This document shows positions 1-53,760 of a DNA stretch of 64,000 nucleotides, in pieces (positions within the stretch are counted from its first letter, which is position 1; the number at the start of each line of letters is the position of its first letter). Under the pieces are notes generated by a model that was not told where the DNA came from, did not search any database, and saw only the letters and a program-made list of their open reading frames with translations. Origin of the DNA: Octopus sinensis (taxonomy: Eukaryota); NCBI RefSeq assembly GCF_006345805.1, contig NC_043012.1, positions 34,162,001 through 34,226,000 of the forward strand. Direction: 5' to 3'. Position numbers and translations under genes: made by a program.

Positions 1-56
1 CATATATATATACACATACATATATAATACACATACATATATATACATATATATAT

Positions 57-88
<32 letters not shown>

Positions 89-651
89 ACATACATATAT
101 ATATACATATATATATACACATACATATATATATACACATACATATATACACATACATATATATATACACATACATATATATATACACATATATATACAC
201 ATACATATATATATACACATATATATATATACACATATATACATACACATATATACATACACATATATACATACATAAATATATATATACACACACACAT
301 ATATATACACACATACACATATATATACACACATACACATATATATATACACATACACATATATATACACACATACACATATATATACACATACACATAT
401 ATATATACACATACACATATATATATATACACATACACATATATATATATACATATACACATATATATACATATACACATATATACGTATACACATATAT
501 ATATATACATACATATATATATACACACATATACACATATATATACATACTATACACATATATATACATACATATACATATATATACATATACACATATT
601 TATACATACATATACACATATATATACATATACACATATTTATATACTTAC

Positions 652-685
<34 letters not shown>

Positions 686-778
686 ATATATTATATATTA
701 TATATATATACACATACATATGTATACATACATATACACATATATGTATACATATATACATACATACATATACACATG
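1..778. repeat. Compound (AT)/(AC) microsatellite array
   Basis: Continuous atatac/acacat repeats. The C/V/Y/I/M-rich ORFs here are translation artefacts. Confidence 0.95.
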
Positions 779-1052
779 GAAATTGTAGTTGTGATACTTG
801 TGCCGGTGGCACATAAAAAGCACCATCCGAACGTGGGCGATGCCAGTGCCGCCATGACTGGTACTTGTGCCAGTGGCACATAAAAAGCACCCACAACACT
901 CTCTTGAGTGGTTGGCGTTAGGAAGGGCACCCAGCGGTAGAAACACTGCCAGATCAGACTGGAGCCTGGTGCAGCCTCCTGGCTTCCCAGACCTTGGTCG
1001 AACCGTCCAACCCATGCTAGCATGGAAAACGGATGTTAAACAATGATGATGA
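779..1052 (+). mobile_element. SINE family A ((GAT)n tail)
   Basis: gtggttggcgttaggaagggca...catgctagcatggaaaacggatgttaaa followed by a (gat)n tail. About 12 copies in the window. Confidence 0.85.
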
Positions 1053-2050
1053 TATACATATATACACATATACTTAAATATACATTTATGTATACATATA
1101 TATATCCATATATAAATAGATATACATATATACAAATATATACATATATGTGCATATAGATATATGTATATATACATAAATACATATATATATATATAAT
1201 GTATACATATATACATACATACGTATATATATATACACACATACAAAAATATATATATATACACATACATACATATATGTATACATACATGTATATATAT
1301 ATATATATATACACATAAATACATATACATACACACATATACATACACATACACATACATGTATATATACAGGTACATACATGTATGTATATACATACAT
1401 GTATACATATACATACATGCATATATATAAACATATATACATACATGCATATAAACATATATACATACATGCATATATATACATACATGCATATATATAT
1501 ACATATATATACAGATATAATACATATATGTATATATAGACACGTATGTATATACATATATATTTACAATATGTATATACATATTTCCACACACACACAC
1601 ACACATATATATATATACGTAGATACATATATACAAATGTATACATATATATATATATACACACACACGTATAATATATATATATATATATTATATACAC
1701 ACACACGTATAATATATATATATATAATATATATATATATACACACACACGTACATATATATATATACACACGTACATATATATACACCCACGTACATAT
1801 ATATATACACACACGTACATATATATATACACCCGTACATATATATATACACACGTAATATATATATATACACACACGTACATATATATATACACACACG
1901 TACATATATATATACACACGTACATATATATATACACACACACGTACATATATATATACACACACGTATATATATATATATATATATACACACACGTATA
2001 TATATATATATATATATATACACACAGATGTATATATACATACATATAAA
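1053..2050. repeat. Compound microsatellite with a higher-order ~20-bp unit (tatatatacacacacgtaca) in its 3' half
   Basis: Directly visible; cacgta recurs at roughly 18-24 bp spacing over 1690-2025. Confidence 0.9.
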
Positions 2051-2051
2051 T

Positions 2052-2436
2052 GCGCAGGAGTGGCTGCGTGCTAAGTAGCTTACTTACCAACCACATGGTT
2101 CTGGGTTCAGTCCCACCTTGGGCAAGTGCCTTCTACTATAGCCACAGGCTGACCAAAGCCTTGTGAGTAGATTTGGTAGACGGAAACTGAAAGAAGCCCA
2201 TCGTATATATGTATATATATATGTGTGTGTGTGTATATGTTTGTGTGTTTGTTTTTGTCCCCCCAACATCGCTTGACAACCGATGCTGGTGTGTTTACGT
2301 TCCCATAACTTAGCAGTTCTGCAAAAGAGTCCGATAGAATAAATACTAGGCCTACAAAGAACAAGTCCTGGGGTTGATCTGCTCGACTAAAGGCAGTGCC
2401 CCAGCAAGGCCGTAGTCAAATGACTGAAACAAGAGA
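2052..2436 (+). mobile_element. SINE family B (tRNA-like head, CORE-like ccttgggcaagtg, internal microsatellite)
   Basis: ggagtggctgcgtg..ggttcagtcccac..cttgggcaagtg...tgactgaaacaag. About 15 copies in the window. Confidence 0.85.
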
Positions 2437-2439
2437 GCA

Positions 2440-3110
2440 TATATACACGTATGTATATAAACATGTATGTAACCTGTTACTCAGAGTAACAGGTTTTGTT
2501 GAATTTTCTGCTGCTTTAAATAAACACGCATGTATACATATACACACGCAAATATATATATATATATATACACACACACGTATATATACATACACACACA
2601 CAAGTATATATATACATATATATACGTACACATATATATATACATACACATATATATATATATAAACATACATATATACATACATACACACATATATAAA
2701 CATACATATATACATAGATACACACACATATATATAAACATACATATATACATACATACACACATATATATAAACATACATATCCATATATATATACATA
2801 AATACATGCATATATATATATATATCCATATACATACAAATATATATCCATTCACATACATATCCATTCACATACATATATATCCATACACATATATATA
2901 TCCATACACATACGTATATATATCCATACACATACGTATATATATACACACATATACATATATATACACACATATACACACATACAAATATATATACACA
3001 TATATATACACACATATATACATACATACACACATATATACTCACATATATATGCATATACACACATATACACATATATACATACATACATATACACACA
3101 CCCATATCCA
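2440..3110. repeat. Compound (AT)/(AC) microsatellite array
   Basis: Directly visible. Confidence 0.9.
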
Positions 3111-3449
3111 TTAGTGTTTGTTTACATCTTCAATCGCTTCCTGGAATGTGTGGTGGGCATTGGTGTGTCAGTTTGCTTTGGCAGGTCATCATACTTTTCT
3201 TGAAATACAGTTATATAAGTTCAGGAAGGGCCCCACATGTGGAACAATGCCTCAACATACTTCTCTAACCCATGCAAGCATGTAAAATAAAAACTTAAGG
3301 AAATGACCAAATGAATACACAATCTATGCAGTACTTCCCTCTGAAGAAAATGTTATGTATTGTCTTCAGTACGTGCAAGCTTGCTGAGAGATTTGTATCC
3401 CATCTTGATCCTGTATTATTTGAGGGAGGTCTTAGGGGAGGCATCTAGT

Positions 3450-3900
3450 GTCTCCAGTGAGTCAATCTACATATGCTGTGTTCAGATGACCTGCTCATGT
3501 ACAGCTTTGCTTTGACATCCACAGCAGTACGTCTCTCACCTGCTCCCGTTCAATTTGTCAGCAATGGCCCACGGAGGGCAAGTGCCTTTCCTTTATAATG
3601 GTGGAAACAGGCAGTAAATCTCTAAACAGCTGTTTGTCGGCTGGATGAGTTCTCCAAAATTTAAGACTGCTCTTAACATTTACTTGTGCTTATAATACTT
3701 GTCCATTTGGTCCCCAATTTGCAGATAGAAGAATGGCCTGTCGTTATGCAGGCCAGCTGTGAATACCTAATAAGCAGTCTGCAACAAAATTATAGGTTGC
3801 CCTTCAGCCAAGCATTACATCCATCAGCCACCCTACCAAGGTCACAATGAAATCCTAAAGCTCCAAAAAGAGCAGAAATGTTACTATCATTGGAAAGGAG
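3450..3900 (-). mobile_element. Highly decayed RTE-like LINE 3' ORF fragment
   Basis: Residual LxYSQL...G.P-like C-terminal motif on the minus strand with many stops. Confidence 0.35.
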
Positions 3901-5833
3901 CATGGTGGTAGCATATGGAATGCAAAATATAAAATACTTTGTCTTTTGATTTCTTCCCACTTTACAGAACAATATTACACATTTGTGAAACCTAGTCTGG
4001 GAAGCCCATCAGTTTGACTGCCACTGCAATCATCTATAGGCCCTATGACCATAGACGAAAAATTAGCAATCAAAAGACATTCCATGACTCACATTAACTT
4101 CAGAAAATGTGGTAAGTATAGTCTGAATTTATACATCAAGATAATAGTGTTAGCTTAAAACCACCCTTAATGTATTTTAATTCATGTCCCATAAGTGCTG
4201 AAGAACCAGGTGACTCACAGGGCAGGCTTCTTTCAGCTTCTGTCTATCCAAACCCCTTTCAATGCTTTGGTTGGCTCCAGTTTAATGGAGGAAGAATCTT
4301 GCCTTAAGACACTCTGCAGTAAGACCGAATCTGAATCCACAGCTTGAATATACTTTCCTCATGTATTCAACCATATATGAATAAAAATGGCTTATCACTA
4401 CCACCACCAATGGTTCTCGAGGTCCATATAAGATTTTGGGGTCAACACAAGCAAAAGAGTAAATTGGATCCACAATAGTATTTTATGAGACTATGAAAAA
4501 ATTTTGCTTTAGATGCATTTATACTGTGAAACAGTTAGGTTTCTTTCTCTGGAATTTTACATAGCTCAGCCTACACAAGGGAATGCTTGGTAAACAAAAT
4601 AGAAATTTTGAAAGGAATATTTATAAAACTAGTTTTAAACAATGAATGGCTACAGGGTACCAAAATAAAATAGTATTCTAAGAGATCCACAAAGAAAAAA
4701 CTGGCTAAGAACCACTGATCATCACCATCTAATTTCCATGATGGACAATGAGTGTCCAAGTTAGTTATCTGAAGGTATTACCTTCCTAGTTGGTATCATG
4801 TTTGATATGGCTCCTACCGTTTCTAAACAGACTACAACAGTTATATGGGTCATGTAGACTTGTTAGTCAAGTTGCTGGCCAGTTGTTGCTTAGTCTCAAA
4901 CCAACCCTAGTGCAGGCATAGCTGTGTTAAGTTTGTTTCTTGACCATATGGCTTACACATGGCTTATAGTAGAAGATGCCTAATAAACCAGTGCATGGTT
5001 TCTTGGGCAAGAGCCTTCTGATGTAGCCCCAAGTACCAAAGCTTTGAGAGTGGATTTGTTAGGTGAAAACTGAAAAAAGCCCTAAATAAATATATGATAG
5101 TGTACAGGACAGAATATGAAACAAATTACACTAAAATCAAGGGTCATCTTAATCACTCAGTATACAAATCCATACTATAACCTGCTGTGGTTTAGAGTGC
5201 CACCAATATGTTACAATCCAAACTTAGTCCTACAGTTGTCTCATAAAACAAGATAGAGTTTACAAATTTAGGAAAAAAAACATATGCGGTATACGTTATC
5301 AATGTATATTAAACATGCTTCCAGTAAAAACACTTGGCAACATGGATGATATTTCAACTGTTAGTGAGGCACTGGGCTCTGCCTTATGCACTCACCAGCC
5401 ACTGCATCAAGGGTGAAATATTACCAGGAAATCTTAAACAGTGAGTATAACTGAAAACCTACATTTCAAAAGAATATTCTAGGGGTGTGGTATTTAAGTA
5501 CATGTTTGTATTTGTGCATGTGTCTGTGTGCTTGTTTACATTTGTTCTCCAAAAATCATTGAGGTACAAGTGATGTTGTCATTTATCCATTGGCTTTGCA
5601 CCTTCAAAGAGTGAAATTTTTAAATTCTTTACTTGAAAACAGTTATGGGTCAGCAACAGGAAGGGCAACCAATTAAAACATTGCCTCAAAAGTACATTTG
5701 CCTTACCCACAATAGCTTGAAAAGCCAGATATCACAAAAATGAAGGCATTTATACACACACACACACACACACACACACGAATATATATTTTTTATAGAC
5801 ATATACTCGCAAATATATTTTTTATAGACACAT

Positions 5834-5868
<35 letters not shown>

Positions 5869-6264
5869 ACACACACACACACAGATATATATATTCAAAC
5901 TATATAAATATATGTAATTACATAAACACACACACATTTACATGCACATTCACACAAATATGAAATGCTATTTTAAACAATACCTACTTGAGTGTTCCAA
6001 CATGGTGACACGCATACAAGAACAATCTCCCAGCCATTCCCACAATTTTCCCTTTTCTTTTAGCATACACACTGCTAATCCTGCCTTAACTATAGACATT
6101 ATATTTGAATGATCGCTTTATCCATCATAATCTGCCTATCCATAATAGAACACAACACAAACAAACTGGAGATAAATTAAAATTTTTGATAAAAATTCTG
6201 AAAAGTTAAAACTGAAATCAAAGTTAATGACAAATGCAATAATTTGGTGCTGGTTGGCACAAGG

Positions 6265-6352
6265 AAATGAAACAATTCAACAACTAGAGAAATAATGACA
6301 AAAAAATGTCTTTTCTAGCGAAGAACTGTTTATTGGCAGAAAATGGTTTATT
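6265..6352 (-). terminator. Candidate intronic cleavage/polyadenylation site in CSTF3 intron 3
   Basis: On the minus strand: two AATAAA (6347-6352, 6329-6334), a CA about 22 nt after the second (6307-6308), then a U/GU-rich tract (tttttttgtcattatttctctagttgttg). Confidence 0.45.
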
Positions 6353-7090
6353 TTGTTCAAAGACTGTAGTTTGAAAAGAATATATATACACACATATACA
6401 TATATATATATATATAGATATAAATATATATATATAGTGTAGATACCTGTAAAGAAAATACATCAAAATGAAAACAGATGTTATGAATAATTTTTTTTTT
6501 TTCACTACAGACCATTCAACACAAATTGCATTTTCTAGAACAACAAACATCTCCCAAACACAGACACACACACACAAACATATTCAACAGACTAAAGCTT
6601 TCAGAAAAACATTCATTCACACAGCCAAAAAAAAAACATTTTGTTCAATGACAAATTGATTGATATTTTTCAGTACTTTCTCTTGAAAATACTAAAATAT
6701 TGATTTTATTTCTACAAATTTTAACATTAAAACAAACAAAAATTTTTAAATGCTAAAATTCAAAACGCGAAAAGTAACTTTTAAAATTTCAAAATAGTTT
6801 TTTGAGTTAGTGGTGTCTAATTGAGAATATTTTATAATTATATTTCTATTATGGAAACGAAATTATAACTCAAGTCACTTGTCATTGAACAAACAAACAA
6901 CCTCTAACACATCCATTTACAAAATCTATGTCATGTTATTTACTACACTGCCTGATATAAATTATTATCTATTAACACTGACAATAAATATAATGTAAAC
7001 ACAATTTTGTGTGTGAGTAGACTGTTTGGTAACAGTTGTGGGTGTTAATCTCCATTATCACATAGGTATTGAAGACAATAAAAACAACAC

Positions 7091-7121
<31 letters not shown>

Positions 7122-8897
7122 TAAATATGCAGTTTCACCATTCCTACTTAACTGTTTTAAGGGTACTATAGTCATTATGGTCAATTTGAAAGAGTATTTC
7201 TTCAGTAATATTTTAAGAGAAGATACAAAGAAACATTTACTAAACATCACGTTTCTGTTGACTCCCTCGGAACATGTTACTCATAACATCTACTATTTCC
7301 ACTAAGACTTTTTTTTTTTAAAATCCCAAAACTATATTAAATTCTCTCAAAAGATTCTTTCACAGACAATAAGGATAAAAGCTAGAGAAGTAGCCTGCCA
7401 TATTCTGGAACCAATTTATTCTATTTTGAGGGCATGGCGGTAAGCACTTGGTTATAAAATTGCAATAAACTTTTTTTTAATTCAATGATATATTCTTGAA
7501 TGATTTGCTCACAAATGTTTATGAAATCATTCTTCATAGAATACAGTGTGAATAAGAACAGAGTGACACATCTATCAAATGGCATCTCATGTCACAAGTT
7601 AACAGAGCTGCTCTTCATTCTTGCTGCCTTCCTTTGATAGGCTAGTTCTCTAACTTTTACAAACATACAATGTTTTCCACACTCCATTTCACTACCAAAT
7701 TATTCTTTATACCACTGTCAAAAACTAATTTCAACTCTATTGTTTTCCCCTACAACTATAGCTTTGTTTCTGCAATCTAAATCTTATATAGAAATATGCA
7801 TCACAGTCAGAAATGGCTTTGCTCTATTTATTGTTCTATTTCCTCCTATACATCAAACTCAATTACCACTCACTCACGCACACTCACTCACTACTGCATG
7901 CATGAAGAAACAATCTAAATAGCATTGAAGACAAACTCGAAAAAATCAAAACGCAAAAAGCCTGATGTCAGACTGTTTTATGATTTCAATGTACAGTGTG
8001 TTCCCCTCCATCTGGCCTACTGGAGAGGAACTGCCTTTCAAGGCTGCTAGTAAAAATTAAAAGTGCTGATATCTCTACAGTAGCAAACAAAAGTACCAGA
8101 ACAATTGGAGAGTTAAAAAAAAATTATAATAAATCTTCCCCAGCGTGTTTAAAATATATAAAAAAAAAAAACAGGAAGGAAGGAAAAGATTACACTTATG
8201 GCATTAATGAACAGAAAACTCTTGAAAAATTACTATTATTTCTTATACTCATACAAGGTGCAAAACTTTGTAACAAAGAGTTAGAACCAACTGAATGAAC
8301 GCAGTACATAACTGGTACTTATTGACTCCCAGAGCAAGAAAAGACAAAGTTGATTGCAACAAGGTTTAGACTTAGAATGTAAATTAAATACTGAAACTTG
8401 TCTGGTACTGACCATTTTTTGCCACATGACCATCCCAAAAGATATATAATTAAAGTTATACTTTGTTGTGTTAAAATATTGACTCTAGATAATTATGCTT
8501 TTTCTTTAATTAAACATTTTCCTAATGACCAGTTTCCTTGCTTGTAATAGTGACTAATGTATTCCATATGAGAAGGGAATCATTAAATAAATGCCACATT
8601 AGCAAACGCATTGATGTCACCCAAAACACTAAAACCTTTTTTTCAAATTTTTATATTTAACCAAAAAGAAAAAACTTTTCTTTTTGGCAAGTATTATAAA
8701 TTTAAATAAGAATGGTCATAAAGAGAAATTATATTTCTTTAAAATTATTTCTATTAAATTTAAATCCATATTGATTTTTAAGTTGCTACTTACTCAACTA
8801 AATTTCTAAATTAAAACAGTTACAATTTGCAGTTAATATTTCAAATCTTTTCTCATCTAAACTAAATTTAAAAGTATTAGTGTATCGCATAGTGTTT

Positions 8898-9120
8898 CAT
8901 CATTTAGCGTCCGTTTTCCATGCTAGCACGGGTTGGACGGTTCGACCGGGGTCTGGGAAGCCAGGAGGCTGCACCAGGCTCCAGTCTGATCTGGCAGTGT
9001 TTCTACAGCTGGATGCCCTTCCTAATGCCAACCACTCTGTGAGTATAGTGGGTGCTTTTTACGTGCCACCGGCACAGGTGCCAGGAGAGGCTGGCAGTCA
9101 AGGCGGTGCTGGCATCGGCC
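8898..9120 (-). mobile_element. SINE family A
   Basis: ctggatgcccttcctaatgccaacc core, matching other copies. Confidence 0.85.
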
Positions 9121-9269
9121 ATCGGTATAGATTTAAGCTCTATTATTTTACCTTCCCATGATTATAAAATCTACTCATTTTTTTACTTGTTTCTGGCATT
9201 AACATAAAGTGTTTTAGTTGAGCAAACCAATCCCAGTAATTATCTTTTAAAGCCTTGCACTTATTCTAT

Positions 9270-9520
9270 TAATTTCTTTTGTTGAACTGCTAAGTTATGG
9301 GGACCTAAACCAACATTGGTTGTCAAGTGGTTGGGAACACAGAACTACACACACGTGCATCCACACAGGACGGGCTTCTTTCAGCTTGCTTTAACCAAAT
9401 CCACTCACAAGGCTTCGAGTCCAGGGCTATAATAAAAGACGCCTGCCAAAGGTGCCACACTGGGACTGAACCTGAAATCATGTAATCAGGACGCAAACCA
9501 CTTACCACACAGCCACGCCC
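9270..9520 (-). mobile_element. SINE family B
   Basis: ccactcacaaggct...gggactgaacc...ccacacagccac, matching other copies. Confidence 0.8.
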
Positions 9521-10120
9521 ATGCCATACTATATAAGATATATGAGTATAGAGGCATTTCTCACACAACCAAATGGAAAAGGTATTAAATTACTCAGGCT
9601 ATACATTATTTGCATTGGCTATAAGCATTTTACTGAGTCACTGAGCAGAATAATTCTAGCTGCTGGGAGTAAGTACCAGGCATTTATAAGAAAGCTTCCT
9701 GCATCAGATAAGCATTCCACATGAGAGAAGGATGATACAGGAAACTAAAATGAATACTCTATGTACTAAGATATCAGAAAGAGAAAATAATAATCCCAAC
9801 CAATAAAAAAAGTTTTAGAATTACATATTTTTATACATCCTTACACATTTTGTTTCTTTTTGTTTCTGTTTTTTTTTTTCTTTTTCATTTTTGTTTTTAC
9901 TTTAAAACCTCATTTTAATCAGAAGTAAAAACAATGGCCTAATACACAATTATAACTGCAGCGAAAAGATACTTGGGAAATATTACTGGACTGTATATTT
10001 TCTCTTTCATTGCAAATAATGGAGGGGTGGGCCTTAATATAAAGATATATCTCAAGTGTTGTCAGGTACATTTGATAGCCATTGTAGAGATACGCTCCTA
10101 TATAACAAAGATTTATAAAC

Positions 10121-10216
10121 CTCTTGCTCAATGTAACTCTTCCAATAGCGTCCAGCATTAGGAAACTGTGTTACAAGCCTCTCATAGGTGTTTCGGGCAT
10201 CTCCAATCATTTTCAT
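10121..10216 (-). CDS. CSTF3: CstF-77 coding exon 3 (HAT repeat)
   Basis: 96-nt exon bounded by ttcag| and |gtttat, phase 0/0. Translates to [32 protein letters not shown] versus human [32 protein letters not shown]. Confidence 0.95.
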
Positions 10217-11038
10217 CTGAAAATAAAGAAACAAAATTCACATGACACTAATTGACTTTCTTAGACAAACAAAAAAAAAAAAAAGAAAAGAAATGAGAAA
10301 TTCAAAAAATTAATTTGGATTTTATATGAGAATTATGTCTTCATAAATAAATTTTCCCAAAAAAGTCCATTGTTAAATAAAATGCTCATGTGAACATGGA
10401 TGCAGGTTAAGTAAAACTAGAAAACCATTTGTGTAGTCAATGTTTTATGGTTAAAATGCTCCTTGAAATGCCGTTTTCATTATTAGTTTTTCTAACTCAA
10501 TAGATTTCTCTGTAGCTTGTCTTAAGCTCTGTGTGTGTGTGTGTGTGAACTCAATTAAGGAACAGTTTGGGGATGAACGAAATCGTAATTATCAAAGAAA
10601 TTCAGTGAGGTTCCTTTAATAAAAAGCAAACCATTCAAATTCAAATACCACCAACTTTAATATGTTAAAGAATATTTCAATTTATGCAGAATGGTTTTCA
10701 ATCTAGACAGACATAAGGTTGGCAATTTTGAGAGGAAGGTTTTAGTTGATACTGTTCACCCAGTACTTCACTGGTATTTTATTTTATTGAACTTGGAAGG
10801 CTGAAAGGAAAAGTTGGCCAAGGCAAGATTTGAAAAGGTGGGGAAATATCGCAAGGTTTTTTTTTTTGTTTTTTTTTTGGATACTCTAACAATTTTGCCA
10901 GTTTGTCACCTTACATGTATGTATAATAAATAGCAGTTTGATATACTGACAATTGACTTCTGTGTTGGTAGCCTTCCTAAACAAAAATAAGGTGATTATA
11001 GGCATTTCTTTGCTATTTTTATTCAATATGTTTATTAG

Positions 11039-14378: not shown

Positions 14379-14657
14379 ATCATCATCGTTTAACGTCCGC
14401 TTTCCATGCTAGCATGGGTTGGATGATTTTGCCTGAGGGCTGGCGAACCTGTTGGCTGCACCAGGCTTCAATCTTGATCTGGCAGAGTTTCTATGGCTGG
14501 ATACCCTTCCTAACGTCAACCACTCCAAGAGTGTAGTGGGTGCTTTTACATGCCACTGGCACAGGGCCAGTCAGGCGGTACTGGCAACAACCTCGCTCGA
14601 ATCTTTTACACATGCCACCGGCACAGGTACCTGTAAGGTGATGCTGAACAGAAACTA
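14379..14657 (-). mobile_element. SINE family A
   Basis: catcatcgtttaacgtccgctttccatgctagcatggg start, matching other copies. Confidence 0.85.
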
Positions 14658-15140
14658 GAAAGAGTATCAAATTACAACACCTATTGGTATACAGAAACTA
14701 AAAGCATGAATGTGTTTGTCTCCCAGTCTTGACATCAGATGATAGCTGTAAGTGAGCATCACTGTCAGAGGAACAGTATCATTCACTTCTGACCTTCAGT
14801 GAAAATATGTCTAGCCATGGAAGAAATATTAATTGCTTGGAAACAAAGTAAGGGTTGGCAGCAGTAAGCCAGAGAAAAATCTGCCTCAACAAAACCTGCC
14901 TGATCCTTGCAAGCACGGAAAAGTAGAAATAAGAATGATGTTGATAAATCAATCATCAATATATTTTACAATAATAAACAATTTTTTAATAAACACAGAG
15001 ATGTAACAACAGTAATAGCTTGGTATTTAAAAAATATAGCTGCTACAAATATATATAAAAGAGAAAATCAGGATTGTGTAAACAGTTAATTCAATAGGAC
15101 TGAGAAAATAAAGAGAGCAAAAAAGTTGAAAGAGACTTAC

Positions 15141-15242
15141 CTGGGCATCTCTGATTAGAACACTCCATGCCTCAGTATCATAGGGGTATGCAGAAATTCT
15201 TTTCTCAGCTTTCTTTACTTTATCGGGTATGTAACCTATTTC
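15141..15242 (-). CDS. CSTF3: Cleavage stimulation factor subunit 3 (CstF-77), coding exon 2
   Basis: 102-nt exon bounded by tttag| and |gtaagt, phase 0/0. Translates to [34 protein letters not shown], aligning with human CstF-77 [34 protein letters not shown] (human sequence from memory). Confidence 0.95.
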
Positions 15243-19189: not shown

Positions 19190-19523
19190 CGGCTATCTGG
19201 CCTCCGTGCCGGTGGCACGTAAAAGAGACCATTCAAGCATGATCGTTACCAGCATCACCTTACTGGCACCCGCGCCGGTGGCATGTGTAAAAGATTCGAG
19301 CGAGGTCATTGCCAGTGCCGCCCGACTGGCCCCGTGCAGGTGGCATGTAAAAGCACCCACTACACTCTCGGAGTGGTTGGTGTTAGGAAGGGCATCCAGC
19401 TATAGAAACTCTGCCAGATCAAGATTGAAGCCTGGTGCGGCCATCTGGTTCGCCAGCCCTCAGTCATACGCCCAACCCATGCTAGCATGGAAAGCGGACG
19501 TTAAGTGATGATGATGATGATGA
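19190..19523 (+). mobile_element. SINE family A
   Basis: Internal gtgccggtggcacgtaaaag units and a (gat)n tail. Confidence 0.85.
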
Positions 19524-20429
19524 TTGGCATAAATGATTATATCTAATCTGGTACTGAAAAACTGATTTAACTCAGGAAAAAGCAATAAGGAAATATAGCT
19601 ATCAGTTGAACAAATTTTTAAAAATCAAAAATAATTTGATTCTAAGTCTGAAAAGTTTTATCAAAAGCAAATAAAGTTAAAAAAGATCTTTTGGAAAGAA
19701 AATAGGAACAAGCTACAAAACCATTATCACCCATAATAATGTTTATATTGGGGGGGGGGGGAGACAGCATTTGTTTTTACAAGATTTTTTTTTCAAGTAA
19801 AATTCAAAATTAAATACATAATTGCAATTATTTGTGTTTCATATTCTTGATAAAAATGAAAATCCAAACAAAGTATTTTCTCTTTATTTTTTAATTCCAG
19901 CAATTTACTGTTTTTAACTACTACTACCACTATTACTACCAGATATAACTATTGCAGTAATAGGTTGGTTACTCTGAACAACAACACATTAAATTATCAA
20001 CATGTGTTAACACTAGAATTACCGTTTACATTCCAGCTTTCAGACACCAGCTATTCGCCCATTAGTTCTCTCTAATCTATTCAAATCAAATCTAACTACA
20101 TCTAAAAATAGAGTAACTTTTGTTGCCAGAATTATGCTTTTAGTATTTAATAAAATGTCACAAATAAAATTTTCATTACAGTGCAACAACCAAAGCATGT
20201 AGCACTACATATATAAAAAAGGAACTATGGAAAAGATTTAAAACATATGTGAGTCATGATTGTTCACCAAATTTCACTGACAAAACTTTGGCCAACCAGA
20301 GGCTATGATGGAAAATGGTCAACAAAGGTGCCATGCAGTGTACTGAATTCAAAACCATGTCAACATGAAGTATATAACCATTTGATTTGAAGTACCAAAC
20401 ACAAACTTAGGAAATCATCATTTATCACA

Positions 20430-20593
20430 CCTAGCACCCACTACACTCACGGAGTGGTTGACGTTAGGAAGGGCATCCAATCGTAGAAACTGCCAGATCA
20501 AGATTGGACCTGGTGCAGACTTCTGGCTTCCCAGACCCCAGTTGAACCGCCCAACCCATGCTAGCATGGAAAGCAGACGTTAGATGATGATGA
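20430..20593 (+). mobile_element. SINE family A, 5'-truncated
   Basis: cacccactacactc..ttaggaagggcatcc..gatgatga. Confidence 0.8.
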
Positions 20594-21497
20594 ATATCTT
20601 GAAATATTTTTATCTTCAATTAAAGACAGTGTTTAAATTACTATTTATAAGAATTTTTTTTCACAAACTTATGGAAATGAATCTTCAAATAGAAATACAA
20701 CGCACAACATAATTAGGTTTTGAATTTGGTCCTAAATTCTAACAGCATCATCATTACTTAACATCCTTGTTCCATGCAGGCATGGGTTGTTTGAAGAGAT
20801 CTGATGGAGCCAAGGATTTCATCATGCTCTCATATGGCTTCTACTGCTGGATGCACTTCCAAATGCCAGCATGTACTGGATGCTTTTTTCTTTTGTGCCA
20901 CCAACACTACTGAGGTTACCATGCAGCTTGCAAGAATGGACCTCAAAGAAGGGGAGGGGCAGTTTGATATTAGAGGATGATGAGAGGTTACAGTATGAGA
21001 GAATGCGCAGGGGTGGAGGGGGAAAGAACAGGTTCTTGAAGAAGAGCTGCATGATCACTAACAATTTTAATAAAATCCTACAAAAAAAGGATAAGTTAAG
21101 GCTAATTGAGAAAAGTTAGGCTTCACAGAGATCACTGGAGATGGATTGATATGTAGGTAAGCCCATCAAATGGAAGGAAAGGGAAACTAAAAGACAAAAG
21201 TTCATCACCATCTCCAGTCACCTGCAAAAGATGACAATCCTTGTTACCCAACAAAAAAAGTTACATACTACTGAGAGGTGAATATAACAGTGAATGGATC
21301 CATCACATACCAACAAATACATTTATAACCTTCCAATAAAACATATTCATCAACACAACTATCTCACCAAATACTAACAAGAAAACTAGTATTCTCATAG
21401 AGAGTAAGCTACATGAAGCTAGTGATGAGAGATGGTAAGCAGCCTTTGTAGGTTTCTCCCATCTCAAGTAAAATGTTGTACCAATAGGTCTCATTAA

Positions 21498-35850: not shown

Positions 35851-36260
35851 CAGAGGAGTTTAAAACTGTTTTTTTTTTTTTTATGTAAATTCAGTATTTC
35901 AAACAGTGGAATATATTTTATTATTATGGCCGGGTTCAATGACGAAAATTAACGAAAACAGTAAAAAAAATTTAATCTTGAAAGTTATTGCAAAGTTTAG
36001 GATTGGTGAAGAAGAAGGGGGGAGGGGTTGAAAAACATGGCTTTTTGAAGAAAAAAAATAATAAGCGATTTATAAGTGTTTTTTGCAATGTGACATGTAT
36101 ATAAAATGTGGAAAACAATCCCAAGAAATTCCATATTATTCGTGACGGACATTCTGAAAGTTCGGACAGATACATGCATGGTCACGACTGGAACGCTTTT
36201 GATAAGAAAACAACACAAAACTACAAGAACTTTTTTTTTTTTAATATGTTTTGCACTTAC

Positions 36261-36440
36261 CTCCGGGGGTAATGCCGCTGTGGCTGTTAAATTGGTTGTT
36301 GTTGCAGCAGCCAAAGCGGCTGTTGATGATGATGATGATGGTGATGTCGATGTTATTGATGAGGTTAGTGGAAGTGTTGGTGAGACAACAGGAGTACTGG
36401 ACAAGGCAGAAACCAGGGTGCAGGGGTTGGTAGCCATCAT
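36261..36440 (-). CDS. CSTF3: Probable first coding exon of CstF-77 (60 aa, S/T/A-rich)
   Basis: ATG at 36440 opens 60 codons ending ...LPPE, followed by a consensus GAG|gtaagt donor. Phase 0 is compatible with exon 2, and it lies just downstream of a CpG-containing promoter-like region. The link to exon 2 is inferred, with no homology support. Confidence 0.6.
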
Positions 36441-37280: not shown

Positions 37281-37516
37281 TTTAGAACAGTTTATATAGT
37301 CAGGGAATGCTTGCGCTAGAAATAATAAATCGACTTTACTCTTGCTTTAATTTATATGACCACGAAAGGCAAAGTTTGTCCCCACCCAACGTTATTTGGA
37401 ATGAGAATGTCAAAATCCGTTGCTAAATATCAAAAGGCATTTGACAGATGCTCCCCGCCATTAATATTCCCTCCACCATGTCACGTTAGCTTTGTGCTCA
37501 AAAAATGTTCCAACTT

Positions 37517-37888
37517 AAACTAACTTGTCTTTTTCAAAGTATTACCGTATTTTTAACAACATTATCTATAAAATCCCTTTTTTTTTTTGAGAATTGCAGA
37601 GTATGGTTTGAGGATTATTTAGTTTCTTTTTCTAGCATAAGGGTGGTGCCAATCCAGTTTCGCTTTTCACCAAAGCAATTCCACTTTTTACACTTTTGCT
37701 GTAAACTAACTTGTCTTTTTCAAAGTATTACCTTATTTTTAACAACATTATCTATAAAATCCCTTTTTTTTTTTGAGAATTGCAGAGTATGGTTTGAGGA
37801 TTATTTAGTTTCTATTTCTAGCATATGGGTGGTGCCAATCCAGTTTCGCTTTTCACCAAAGCAATTCCACTTTTTACACTTTTGCTGT
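37517..37888. repeat. Tandem duplication, 2 x 186 bp
   Basis: 37517-37702 and 37703-37888 differ at only a few positions. Confidence 0.95.
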
Positions 37889-38896
37889 AGTTTTCATTCC
37901 ACATACACAAGCTTCGCGTCACTTGAACTTTCCAGAGAAATCTGGTTGTCATTTCCATCTGATCGAGCCACCGCTCACTCCCACCAGACCTTCCCTCCCT
38001 TTCTTTATTTTCCAACAATTTCGTCAGATTCGTATGTTTTCGATATCGGAGATTACGATTTTGCCAAAATAAACATGTTTTCAAAATTTTAATTTCCTCC
38101 ATCTCACTCCCTTTGTTTCACATTTTTTTTCGAATTTTTTCTATTAATTAACGAGAGAAATGCAGATATTACGAATTTGGAAAAAATACAAACAATTTCG
38201 AATTTTCTTAGAAAACATCCTGTGTTGCCCCTCCACACCCCTTCCTGTTTTCCAAACGCACAAAACTCGGGTATGTTTTACCTATCGGATATATTCTTTT
38301 GTGCCATGCACAGATTTCTCCTGAAACAACAGACGATAAAATATCAACACCTCACCAGAAAACTAGATATGCTAGAAACAACAGCTGGAAAATATTTTTC
38401 GTCACCCCGAGGTTTTTGGGGGTTTTTTTTTCATTTACAATCTACTCAGCTTACGGAATAAGGTGAACTTGTGACAACTGAGAAAAGTATGGGCAAATCA
38501 TTGTTACACACACAAAAAAAATCGTCTTTGTTTTACAAATCTCATGATAGATAAAAGCTTCAAATTCTGAGGGGTTTTATTTATTTTATGCAATTTCTGA
38601 GAAATTTAGTAAAATCCTGTAATTTGGGGATATTTTAATTATCTATTTTATTTTATGTAAGATGAGATTTTTAAATATGCTTTTCACAAATTGCAAAATG
38701 AAAAAGTAAATCATAATTTCAATTGGAGTTGAGCCATAATTTTGCACATGCGCGAGACAAAGATTTCTGATGAATATATTTACAATAAATCCCTTGCAAT
38801 ATTGTGGTTTACTATTTAAGCTTACATCAATTCCTTCGTGGTATTGTTTTGCATTTGATAAAATAGATATATACAAATTATAAAAATATACAATAT

Positions 38897-52499: not shown

Positions 52500-53760
52500 C
52501 CTATTGTAAAAAAAATGTCTTCAGCAACATTCAATTTGGAACCATTCAAAACAGTTCAGCATCTCTTGATTGGTTGAAAGACATATATTCAGTTTTCTTG
52601 ACATTTGCAGTTCTATTTTAGCAGCTGATGTTTCTATTCTGCTGAGTAGCTGTTGTGGTCAATCTATTTCATTAGATATGAGTGCAGTATCATCTGTGAA
52701 GTCCAGGTCTGTGATGGTTATTGCTGGTACTCTCCATGATCTTTGCTGATCTATGGTAAAACCAAGGTCTTTGTCACTGTTGTCTAAAGCCTGCTGCATT
52801 GCACAATCCAATACAACTGCAGACAGGTAAGGTGCAAGCGTATCTCCTAGTAGCATCCAAGATAATCATCATCATCATCATTTAACATCTGCTTTCTATG
52901 CTAGCATGGGTTGGACGATTTTGACTGAGGGCTGACGAACCAGATGGCTGCACCAGGCTCCAATCTTGATCTGGCAGAGTTTCTACAGCTGGATGCCCTT
53001 CCTAACGCCAACCACTCCGAGAGTGTAATGGGTGCTTTTTAAGTGCCACCAGCACAGGAAAAAGCGGATAAAGAATTCCATTTCTCCGTCAGATGACAAC
53101 ACATGAGCTCTGGTCTTTCCATAGGTTTTTGCAATGACAAGAACAAGTTCTTTAGGAATGCCATATTCTCGAAGGATGTTCAATATTTTGTAATGATGGA
53201 TGCTGTGAAATGCTTTGCTGAAGTCCATGAAGGTTATAATGGCAAGTAGCTGTCTTGATTCAATTCCTTCTACAACATGTCTCAGAGCTAAGATCTGAGA
53301 TGTTGTTGATCTTTCTAGTCTAAATCCATTTTGATTTGCTCTCAGATGACCATCAAGCAACAGTTGAATCCTGCTGAGGACCATTCGGTTGATAACTTTG
53401 AGTGTGGGATATTGGACAGTGCAATTTCTTTGTAGTTACTTTCATTGCTGAGGTTTCCTGATTTTGGGATCAAGTCAATCTTGGACCACTACTCTGGAAT
53501 TCTTTGGTTCTGCAAAATCTTATTCGCAAAATCCAGTATTATTTCATTCAGATTGCACCTCTTCTCTTCTCTCTTTTTATATTCTCTTATATACCATTGT
53601 ATTTTTTTCTTTATTTTCTGCTTATATACACAGGAGTGTGAAAGACTAAGGGAGTAAATCCCTACAGAAAATTCAGAAAGAAGGCCCCTAAGACAGTTGG
53701 TTGGGAGGACTGAGTCAAACCATCTTCTGGCAGCCCCCGGTGTAGAGAAAACTTCCATCC
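52500..53760 (-). pseudogene. Decayed RTE-type LINE RT, interrupted by SINE A
   Basis: NQNGFRLERSTTSQILALR..FMDFSKAFHSIH..GIP and GDTLAPYL..DLDFTDDTALIS. Confidence 0.85.
52866..53066 (-). mobile_element. SINE family A inserted in the RTE RT
   Basis: Flanked by gataa at 52861-52865 and 53067-53071. Confidence 0.85.

What the first reader, a model, noticed from the sequence alone, without database searches (positions are those of the whole stretch)
6265..10120. Possible CstF-77 intronic polyadenylation feedback loop in a mollusc-like genome
Seen: the exon-3 donor is weak (GAG|gtttat), whereas exon 2 and putative exon 1 use gtaagt. No exon 4 was found in the 10 kb that follow. About 3.8 kb into the intron there is a canonical poly(A) signal: tandem AATAAA, CA, and a U/GU-rich downstream element. 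Established: human CSTF3 (intron 3) and Drosophila su(f) (intron 4) autoregulate through an intronic poly(A) site coupled to a weak 5' splice site. Inference: the same rheostat operates here and gives a truncated product ending ...[26 protein letters not shown] (ORF 10052-10234). I am not aware of this being described in cephalopods.
Basis: partly seen in the sequence, partly recalled or inferred. Interest (0 to 1): 0.72.

Follow-up and report, generated by a model that had tools for sequence, protein, structure and literature searches.

The report
Octopus CstF-77 intron-3 premature polyadenylation site

Summary
The sequence observations hold. The minus strand carries CstF-77 exons 1-3. Their translation is identical to the first 126 residues of an annotated 770-aa Octopus vulgaris/sinensis protein. 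The exon-3 donor GAG|GUUUAU is very weak, whereas exons 1 and 2 use GUAAGU. No exon 4 lies in the following 10.1 kb. The tandem AAUAAA/CA/U-rich site at 6352-6265 exists.

The short-isoform idea is supported by transcripts from relatives. RNA-seq contigs from at least two other octopods, in 29 and 13 collection blocks, join exons 1-2-3 and then run 0.9-1.8 kb into intron 3. NCBI models the same product in O. bimaculoides. The intron position is the same as vertebrate intron 3, and the weak donor with U at +3 is shared with other molluscs and a bird.

The only conserved intronic island is 8097-7908, with UGUA, CAUAAA, CA and a U/GU-rich tract. It lies 2.15 kb from the donor, and two of the three long contigs end there. 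An ark clam shows the same arrangement.

Feedback autoregulation is inferred by analogy only. No poly(A) tail was seen. This is a new member of a known kind.

The parts
36261..36440 (-). CstF-77 exon 1, coding part: ATG at 36440, 60 codons, donor GAG|GTAAGT at 36260
   Evidence: tblastn with P0001, the sequence itself, and identity with the N-terminus of O. vulgaris P0300.
15141..15242 (-). CstF-77 exon 2: 34 codons, EIGYIPDK...IRDAQ, donor CAG|GTAAGT
10121..10216 (-). CstF-77 exon 3: 32 codons, MKMIGDARN...SYIEQE
   Evidence: P0300 continues with exon 4 (MKAKNYERVEK...), which is not in the window.
10115..10123 (-). Weak 5' splice site GAG|GUUUAU: U at +3, no A at +4, no G at +5
   Evidence: 5 of 9 matches to the consensus, and a U1 duplex of -4.2 kcal/mol against -11.8 and -16.1 for the two upstream donors. 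The donor and the next 26 intron bases are identical in three octopod lineages. Other molluscs have GTTTAT, GTTCAC, GTTTCT and GTTAAT, and a bird has GTTAAT.
10052..10120 (-). Read-through coding tail (22 codons plus TGA), which is also the conserved donor-proximal intron segment
   Evidence: The same 22-aa tail with the stop at the same place occurs in P0001 (O. bimaculoides), P0002 and P0003. Nucleotide identity is 88-91% out to 10048.
1..10120 (-). Intron 3, first 10.1 kb only; it continues beyond the window start
   Evidence: No exon 4 was found. The annotated gene range is about 138 kb.
7908..8097 (-). Conserved intronic island, the only intronic similarity between the window and octopod contig L002 apart from the donor flank
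   Evidence: 78.8% identity over 198 nt, with a core of 96% over 102 nt (E = 8e-42), while exon 3 is 90.8% identical. It is unique in the window and has no Rfam match.
7992..7995 (-). UGUA upstream element, a CFIm-type motif
   Evidence: It lies in the invariant block ACACTGTAC of alignment A1.
7977..7982 (-). CAUAAA, a non-canonical poly(A) signal hexamer
   Evidence: Invariant in the window, L001, L002 and L003. The same hexamer heads the single strong site in the ark-clam intron.
7961..7967 (-). Inferred cleavage zone, with CA at 7967/7966 and 7964/7963
   Evidence: The equivalent of 7963 is where L003 ends, with an A in place of the genomic G. L001 ends 2 nt further on. L002 is 100% identical to L003 up to that base and reads through.
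7920..7962 (-). U-rich/GU-rich downstream element GGCUUUUUGCGUUUUGAUUUUUUCGAGUUUGUCUUCAAUG
   Evidence: 78% T+G with three T runs. It is identical between the window and L002.
6265..6352 (-). A possible distal site without supporting evidence
   Evidence: Present as described. It is one of three strong consensus sites in the intron. No homologous sequence from another species could be obtained.

Best explanation
The window holds the 5' part of the Octopus vulgaris/sinensis CstF-77 (CSTF3) gene.

Exon 3 can be used in two ways. It can be spliced across an intron of more than 10 kb to exon 4, which gives the 770-aa protein. Or it can be extended into the intron as a composite terminal exon that ends at an intronic cleavage/polyadenylation site. 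The second route gives a short mRNA with a 148-codon frame: exons 1-3 plus 22 intronic codons.

The likely mechanism has three parts.
1. The exon-3 donor GAG|GUUUAU pairs poorly with U1 snRNA.
2. The acceptor is far away, so the nascent RNA stays unspliced for a long time.
3. A sub-optimal poly(A) site 2.15 kb downstream is exposed during that time. It consists of UGUA, CAUAAA at 7982-7977, CA at about 7966-7963, and a long conserved U/GU-rich element.

The hexamer is poor and the CstF-binding downstream element is strong. Use of the site should therefore rise with CstF activity and fall with U1 activity. That would cap production of full-length CstF-77, as shown for vertebrate CSTF3 intron 3.

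The AAUAAA pair at 6352/6334 is at most a distal back-up site.

**Shown here:** gene identity, exon structure, the weak conserved donor, the large intron, short spliced-then-read-through RNAs in related octopods and an ark clam, two conservation peaks (donor flank and island), and contig ends at the island.

**Inferred:** the exact cleavage site, use of the site in this species, and the feedback itself.
For: **Gene identity.**
- The exon 1-3 translation is identical to residues 1-126 of 'cleavage stimulation factor subunit 3-like [Octopus vulgaris]'.
- It matches the Pfam Suf domain.

**Short isoform in relatives.**
- Logan RNA-seq contigs L001-L010 encode P0002, which the index lists in 29 collection blocks.
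- L011-L020 encode P0003 and come from 13 contigs.
- Both sets have exons 1-2-3 spliced and then 0.9-1.8 kb of contiguous intron 3.
- NCBI model XP_014768041.1 of O. bimaculoides encodes the same product.

**Weak donor.**
- The weak donor is conserved.

**The island.**
- It is the only intronic region conserved between the window and L002, at 96% over 102 nt.
- Between the L001 and L002 lineages, identity is 96-100% near the donor, 75-92% in the middle of the intron, and 97-100% over the last 400 nt before the site.
- L003 ends at the CA with a non-genomic A, and L001 ends 2 nt later.

**Independent scan.**
- A poly(A)-site scan with criteria fixed finds exactly one strong site in the L002 intron part, which is the island.
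- It also finds exactly one strong site in 10 kb of Tegillarca intron 3. That site again uses CAUAAA and lies 26 nt past the end of RNA contig L030.

**Vertebrate parallel.**
- Luo et al. 2013 describe a weak 5' splice site, a huge intron, conserved UGUA, a non-AAUAAA hexamer, a GU-rich element, a 103-aa ORF and feedback.
Against: - No poly(A) tail was seen on any contig. The only non-templated base is a single A in L003.
- L002 reads 72 nt past the proposed site.
- All transcript evidence comes from other octopods and a clam. No short-isoform ORF of O. vulgaris/sinensis appeared in the protein collection.
- Contigs could end for assembly reasons.
- CAUAAA is a weak hexamer.
- The octopus-clam resemblance of the element is not significant by generic alignment or k-mer chaining against shuffles. 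The motif pattern that matches it was chosen after seeing both sequences.
- Dependence on CstF or U1 levels was not and could not be tested.
Confidence: 0.55

Rival explanations
1. One reading: the functional intronic poly(A) site is the tandem AAUAAA at 6352/6334, with cleavage near 6307, 3.8 kb into the intron. The island at 8097-7908 is something else.
For: - The site has canonical hexamers, a CA at the right distance and a 62% T downstream tract.
- It is the only strong minus-strand site in the window with a canonical hexamer.
- L002 reads through the island, so some transcripts continue downstream.
Against: - No comparative or transcript evidence exists for it.
- No contig reaches it.
- Two of the three long contigs stop 1.65 kb upstream of it, at a conserved poly(A)-like element.
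- In vertebrates the real site is sub-optimal and strongly conserved, not a consensus AAUAAA.
Confidence: 0.2
2. There is no regulated polyadenylation. The read-through contigs are unspliced or slowly spliced pre-mRNA of a long intron with a weak donor (intron retention), and the contig ends are assembly accidents.
For: - No poly(A) tail was observed.
- Most contigs break at (TA)n microsatellites.
- L002 continues past the island.
Against: - Introns 1 (21 kb) and 2 (4.9 kb) are cleanly removed in every contig, while intron 3 is contiguous with exon 3 in more than 40 collection entries from two species.
- Two contigs from lineages that are 93% identical end within 2-3 nt of each other at a conserved hexamer + CA + U/GU element.
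- Conservation peaks at the donor and at the island.
- NCBI models a terminal exon there in O. bimaculoides.
Confidence: 0.13
3. The conserved island is a different functional element, such as an intronic splicing regulator, an enhancer or an unannotated small RNA, that merely looks like a poly(A) site.
For: - Conservation alone does not name a function.
- The hexamer is non-canonical.
Against: - There is no Rfam match.
- No splice-site consensus occurs at the contig ends.
- The order and spacing UGUA, hexamer, CA, U/GU tract is that of a poly(A) site.
- RNA contigs end there in octopods and within 26 nt of the analogous element in the clam.
Confidence: 0.1

Closest known systems
Vertebrate CSTF3 (CstF-77) intron-3 poly(A) site and feedback loop (Pan et al. 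2006; Luo et al. 2013, PMC3708835)
   Same: - It is the same gene and the same intron position: after YIE[A/Q]E, phase 0.
- Both have a very weak 5' splice site. A bird has GAG|GUUAAU and octopus has GAG|GUUUAU.
- Both have a very large intron.
- Both give a short mRNA with an ORF of exons 1-3 plus a few intronic codons: 103 aa in human, 148 aa here.
- Conservation is concentrated at the donor and at a poly(A) element made of UGUA, a non-AAUAAA hexamer and a U/GU-rich downstream element.
   Different: - The hexamer is CAUAAA here and AUUAAA in vertebrates.
- No nucleotide similarity of the poly(A) element to vertebrates was shown.
- Intron 2 is 4.9 kb here and tiny in vertebrates.
- Poly(A) ends, the response to CstF-77 level and the response to U1 are demonstrated in vertebrates and untested here.
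Drosophila su(f) intronic poly(A) autoregulation (Audibert and Simonelig 1998; Juge et al. 2000, as cited in PMC3708835)
   Same: It is the orthologous gene. A truncated intronic-poly(A) RNA limits full-length expression.
   Different: According to Luo et al. 2013, the fly site sits in a different exon/intron context, shares no surrounding sequence and has no in-frame stop. The octopus case matches the vertebrate layout, not the fly one. The fly gene was not examined here.
Composite-terminal-exon switches in other genes: IgM heavy chain secreted/membrane switch, and PCF11 intronic poly(A) autoregulation (PMC6428223)
   Same: All rest on kinetic competition between a weak or distant splice and an intronic poly(A) site whose use depends on 3'-end factor levels.
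   Different: They are different genes. The IgM short isoform encodes a functional protein. PCF11 uses intron 1.

Membership tests
CstF-77 intron-3 intronic polyadenylation module (vertebrate type) | The host gene is the CstF-77/CSTF3/su(f) orthologue | tested here: met
   The match to the O. vulgaris CSTF3-like protein is 126 of 126 residues, and the Pfam Suf domain is hit.
CstF-77 intron-3 intronic polyadenylation module (vertebrate type) | The intron is at the homologous position, after the codon for the last E of YIExE, phase 0 | tested here: met
   Octopus has YIEQE|GT. The bird Catharus has YIEAE|GT in genomic DNA. Short models from fish, birds and nematodes diverge at the same residue.
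CstF-77 intron-3 intronic polyadenylation module (vertebrate type) | A weak, conserved 5' splice site | tested here: met
   GAG|GUUUAU has a U1 duplex of -4.2 kcal/mol against -11.8 and -16.1 for the upstream donors. It is identical, with 26 nt of flank, in three octopod lineages. Every mollusc examined and the bird have U at +3. No genome-wide percentile could be computed.
CstF-77 intron-3 intronic polyadenylation module (vertebrate type) | An unusually large intron | tested here: met
   The intron is longer than 10.1 kb, because exon 4 is absent from the window. The gene range is about 138 kb.
CstF-77 intron-3 intronic polyadenylation module (vertebrate type) | A short mRNA with upstream exons spliced and exon 3 extended into the intron | tested here: met
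   This holds in two other octopod lineages, an ark clam and further molluscs, and in the O. bimaculoides gene model. It was not shown for the window's own species.
CstF-77 intron-3 intronic polyadenylation module (vertebrate type) | Mapped cleavage/poly(A) ends inside the intron | tested here: inconclusive
   Two of the three long contigs end within 2-3 nt of each other at the CA of the island, one of them with a single non-genomic A. No poly(A) tail was seen, and one contig reads through.
CstF-77 intron-3 intronic polyadenylation module (vertebrate type) | A conserved sub-optimal poly(A) element: UGUA, variant hexamer, U/GU-rich downstream element | tested here: met
This holds for the island 8097-7908.
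CstF-77 intron-3 intronic polyadenylation module (vertebrate type) | Intronic site usage rises with CstF-77/CstF activity (negative feedback) | not testable with these tools
   This needs knock-down or over-expression experiments with isoform measurement.
CstF-77 intron-3 intronic polyadenylation module (vertebrate type) | Intronic site usage rises when U1 snRNP is inhibited | not testable with these tools
   This needs U1 antisense treatment or donor-strength reporters.
Drosophila su(f)-type intronic poly(A) autoregulation | The site lies in the fly-specific intron and the truncated RNA has no in-frame stop | not tested
   The fly locus was not fetched. According to PMC3708835 its structure differs from the vertebrate one. 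The octopus short RNA has an in-frame stop, unlike the fly RNA as described there.

The most novel reading that the evidence does not exclude
The CstF-77 intron-3 'weak donor plus intronic poly(A) site' sensor is not a vertebrate invention that converged with the fly mechanism. It would be an ancestral bilaterian feature, kept at the same intron, with the same GAG|GUU-type donor, in molluscs and vertebrates for more than 500 million years. Molluscs would use a conserved CAUAAA/U-GU-rich site. This would revise the 'convergent evolution' reading of Luo et al. 2013.
Probability: 0.4. Interest if true: 0.65.

Novelty: new member of a known kind. Interest (0 to 1): 0.5.

Why it matters
CstF-77 levels set global poly(A)-site choice, so how cells hold that level steady is a central question in 3'-end processing. 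The intronic poly(A) feedback is documented in vertebrates and, in a structurally different form, in Drosophila. The published view is that these arose by convergence, and none was found in C. elegans (PMC3708835).

Here the vertebrate-type layout appears in octopods and, less completely, in bivalves and gastropods:
- the same intron;
- a weak donor with U at +3;
- a giant intron;
- short spliced-then-read-through RNAs;
- a conserved sub-optimal poly(A) element.

This points to a much older origin and gives a testable site, window about 7963 on the minus strand. It also explains why genome annotations split this gene or call its 5' part 'uncharacterized', as with O. bimaculoides LOC106867628 and the two Tegillarca models KUTeg_006732 and KUTeg_006725.

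Tried and rejected
- **Same-species transcripts.** The exact look-up of the 60-aa genomic ORF was not on record.
- **Octopus genomic intron 3 from other assemblies.** The O. vulgaris/O. sinensis gene range of about 138 kb was too long to fetch.
- **Species names for the SRA runs.** A literature search found none.
- **Deep homology of the poly(A) element between octopus and ark clam.**
  - Smith-Waterman against dinucleotide shuffles gave 59 of 300 shuffles at or above the observed score.
  - Collinear k-mer chaining gave 636 of 1000.
  - Neither is significant, so I do not claim sequence homology of the element across molluscs.
  - The pattern CATAAAA-N(15-45)-TTGTCTT is unique in the window, in L029 and in L023, but it was chosen after seeing the sequences.
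- **Structured RNA in 5800-10400.** Only sub-threshold microsatellite-like hits to microRNA models appeared.
- **P0040 contigs.** They look like genomic or short-intron contigs and were uninformative.
- **The all-short hit list.** I considered and rejected it as evidence that short forms predominate. That tool returned only targets of about 0.55-1.7 times the query length in all three searches.
- **Exon 4 as a hidden 33-nt micro-exon in the window.** No match on the sense strand.
Full report
**What is in the window**

The finding lies on the minus strand. tblastn with human CSTF3 and with proteins found later places three CstF-77 exons:
- exon 1 at 36440..36261;
- exon 2 at 15242..15141;
- exon 3 at 10216..10121.

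Their joined translation of 126 aa is identical to the N-terminus of a 770-aa protein named 'cleavage stimulation factor subunit 3-like [Octopus vulgaris]'. That protein is recorded on the O. sinensis (GCA_006345805.1) and O. vulgaris (GCA_951406725.2) assemblies with a gene range of about 138 kb. The window is therefore O. vulgaris/sinensis, and a long isoform that splices exon 3 to exon 4 (MKAKNYERVEK...) is annotated.

Intron 1 is 21.0 kb and intron 2 is 4.9 kb. Intron 3 runs off the window after 10.1 kb.

**Check of the observation**

- **Donors.** They are GAG|GTAAGT (exon 1), CAG|GTAAGT (exon 2) and GAG|GTTTAT (exon 3). Predicted duplexes with the U1 5' end are -11.8, -16.1 and -4.2 kcal/mol.
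- **Exon 4.** No exon 4 or later exon is present anywhere in the window. This holds with human CSTF3, with 295 CstF-77 proteins and fragments, with the O. vulgaris protein, and with a regex for a possible 33-nt micro-exon.
- **The tandem AAUAAA site.** The hexamers at 6352-6347 and 6334-6329, the CA at 6308-6307 and the U-rich tract are real.
- **Chance.** AAUAAA is not enriched on the sense strand of the intron, with 5 copies against about 11 expected.

**Is there a short isoform?**

A protein search with exons 2-3 plus the read-through tail returned three octopod proteins with exactly this architecture and the same 22-aa tail and stop:
- XP_014768041.1, 'uncharacterized protein LOC106867628' of O. 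bimaculoides;
- P0002, from Logan assemblies of sequencing runs, which the index lists in 29 collection blocks;
- P0003, also from Logan assemblies, carried by 13 contigs.

The contigs L001-L020 have exons 1, 2 and 3 precisely spliced. They then continue without a break 0.9-1.8 kb into intron 3. Most stop at (TA)n microsatellites.

The same pattern is seen in other molluscs (L022, L023, L024). It is also seen in the ark clam Tegillarca granosa, where contig L030 maps to the genome as exon 1, exon 2, and exon 3 plus 820 nt of intron.

Caveat: none of these RNAs is from the window's own species. Attempts to find such RNAs failed.

**Where does the short RNA end?**

Between the window and L002, exon 3 plus about 70 nt of intron is 90.8% identical. 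The intron then becomes unalignable except for one island, window 8097..7908. That island is 78.8% identical over 198 nt, with a core of 96% over 102 nt.

On the sense strand the island reads ...ACACUGUACAUUGAAAUCAUAAAACAGUCUGACAUCAGGCUUUUUGCGUUUUGAUUUUUUCGAGUUUGUCUUCAAUG.... Its parts are:
- UGUA at 7995-7992;
- CAUAAA at 7982-7977;
- CA at 7967/7966 and 7964/7963;
- a 40-nt tract with 78% U+G.

The three contigs that cross the microsatellite behave as follows:
- L003 ends at the second CA, with an A where the genome has G.
- L001, from a lineage 93% identical in the intron, ends 2 nt later.
- L002, 100% identical to L003 up to that base, reads 72 nt further.

Between the L001 and L002 lineages, identity is 96-100% for about 400 nt after the donor. 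It falls to 75-92% in the middle of the intron and returns to 97-100% over the last 400 nt before the site.

The scan with criteria fixed beforehand finds one strong site in the L002 intron part, which is this one. It also finds exactly one strong site in 10 kb of Tegillarca intron 3. That site again uses CAUAAA and lies 26 nt beyond the end of the clam RNA contig.

I therefore place the main intronic poly(A) site at about 7966-7963. No sequence from another species covering it could be obtained.

**Limits of that inference**

- No poly(A) tail was seen.
- Contig ends can have assembly causes.
- The octopus-clam resemblance of the element (shared CAUAAAACA, GUCUGAC, UUGUCUUCAA) is not significant by local alignment or k-mer chaining against shuffles.
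- The pattern that singles it out was defined after the fact.
- The island has no Rfam match and is single-copy in the window.

**Comparison with what is known**

Luo et al. 2013 (PMC3708835) describe the following for vertebrate CSTF3 intron 3:
- a 33-kb intron;
- a 5' splice site at the 0.7th percentile;
- conservation focused on the donor and on a poly(A) element with UGUA, AUUAAA and U/GU-rich sequences of sub-optimal strength;
- a 103-aa ORF isoform;
- feedback by CstF-77 and control by U1.

They regard the fly su(f) site as convergent and found nothing in C. elegans.

The intron position is shown here to be the same. In genomic DNA of the bird Catharus ustulatus, exon 3 ends at YIEAE with the donor GAG|GTTAAT. 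That is the same hexamer as in the ark clam, and octopus has GTTTAT.

A profile search of 1.84 billion representatives found many short ORFs in which exons 2 and 3 are spliced and the sequence diverges right after YIExE. Among the few that carry names are fish, birds and nematodes.

Literature searches found no report of this in molluscs.

**Verdict**

- The idea of a CstF-77 intron-3 premature polyadenylation isoform in a cephalopod is supported by transcripts from relatives and by the conservation pattern.
- The feedback function is an inference by analogy.
- This is a new member of a known kind. The more interesting implication is that the vertebrate-type module may be ancestral rather than convergent.

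Noticed in passing
L021:300-345 (Logan SRR12737824, unnamed species): A full-length CstF-77 mRNA contig joins exon 3 (..ATAGAACATGAG) directly to ..GGAAAAGATGGCTCAAGC (KMAQAYDF..). Exon 4 is skipped and the frame shifts, giving a 77-aa ORF followed by an overlapping 592-aa ORF. This could be a second, splicing-based way of making non-productive CstF-77 RNA.
   Followed up: partly
L027:1540-1580; proteins P0008, P0031, P0034, P0041, P0069, P0098, P0111: In several taxa the sequence after exon 3 is a 33-nt micro-exon (e.g. ag|ATGAAAATGCGGAACTTTGAGAAGGTGGAAAAG|gtatgt). Many short ORFs read through the donor after ...VEK, including Argopecten irradians 'CSTF3-like', 102 aa. Read-through there may be another recurrent truncation point.
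   Followed up: no
L029 (Tegillarca granosa CM056596.1) and proteins P0005 and P0196: The clam annotation splits CstF-77 into two gene models: KUTeg_006732 (92 aa, exons 1-3 plus read-through) and KUTeg_006725 (459 aa, the rest). O. bimaculoides likewise labels the 5' part 'uncharacterized protein LOC106867628'.
   Followed up: partly
window 1-780, 1050-2050, 2530-3100: About 2.3 kb of degenerate (TA)n/(CA)n microsatellite arrays lie inside intron 3, separated by SINE-like pieces. Similar (TA)n tracts are where most RNA-seq contigs of the related octopods break.
   Followed up: partly
window 781-1046, 8880-9130, 14414-14670, 19200-19510, 20418-20620 (both orientations): There are repeated SINE-like elements. 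Their translations share MLAWVGRFD.GLGSQEAAPGSSLIWQCFY-type peptides in the ORF listing, with at least five copies. One copy sits in intron 3 between the donor and the conserved island.
   Followed up: no
window 52983-53384 (-): A 133-aa ORF matches reverse transcriptase RVT_1 (E = 1.3e-9). It is a retroelement fragment upstream of the CstF-77 gene.
   Followed up: partly
window 37505-38092 (+): A 195-aa ORF contains an internal direct duplication (..LTCLFQSIT.FLTTLSIKSLFFFENCRVWFEDYLVS.SSI.VVPIQFRFSPKQFHFLHFCC.. twice), about 1 kb upstream of exon 1. It has only a sub-threshold Pfam hit.
   Followed up: no
L002:1-21, L003:1-20, L011:1-16, L017:1-12: Several octopod transcript contigs begin with a run of 12-21 T directly upstream of the 5' UTR. 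This is either a genomic T tract at the promoter or the poly(A) tail of a divergent antisense RNA.
   Followed up: no
window 10120-7966 (-): The 2.15 kb between the weak donor and the conserved island contains no AAUAAA. It has only two AUUAAA (9919, 8510), both with A-rich or poor downstream sequence. Sense-strand AAUAAA is about two-fold under-represented in the first 10 kb of the intron.
   Followed up: partly
tool behaviour: the search for homologous proteins returned only targets of about 0.55-1.7 times the query length in all three searches. A list consisting only of short proteins from a short query is therefore partly an artefact.
   Followed up: partly
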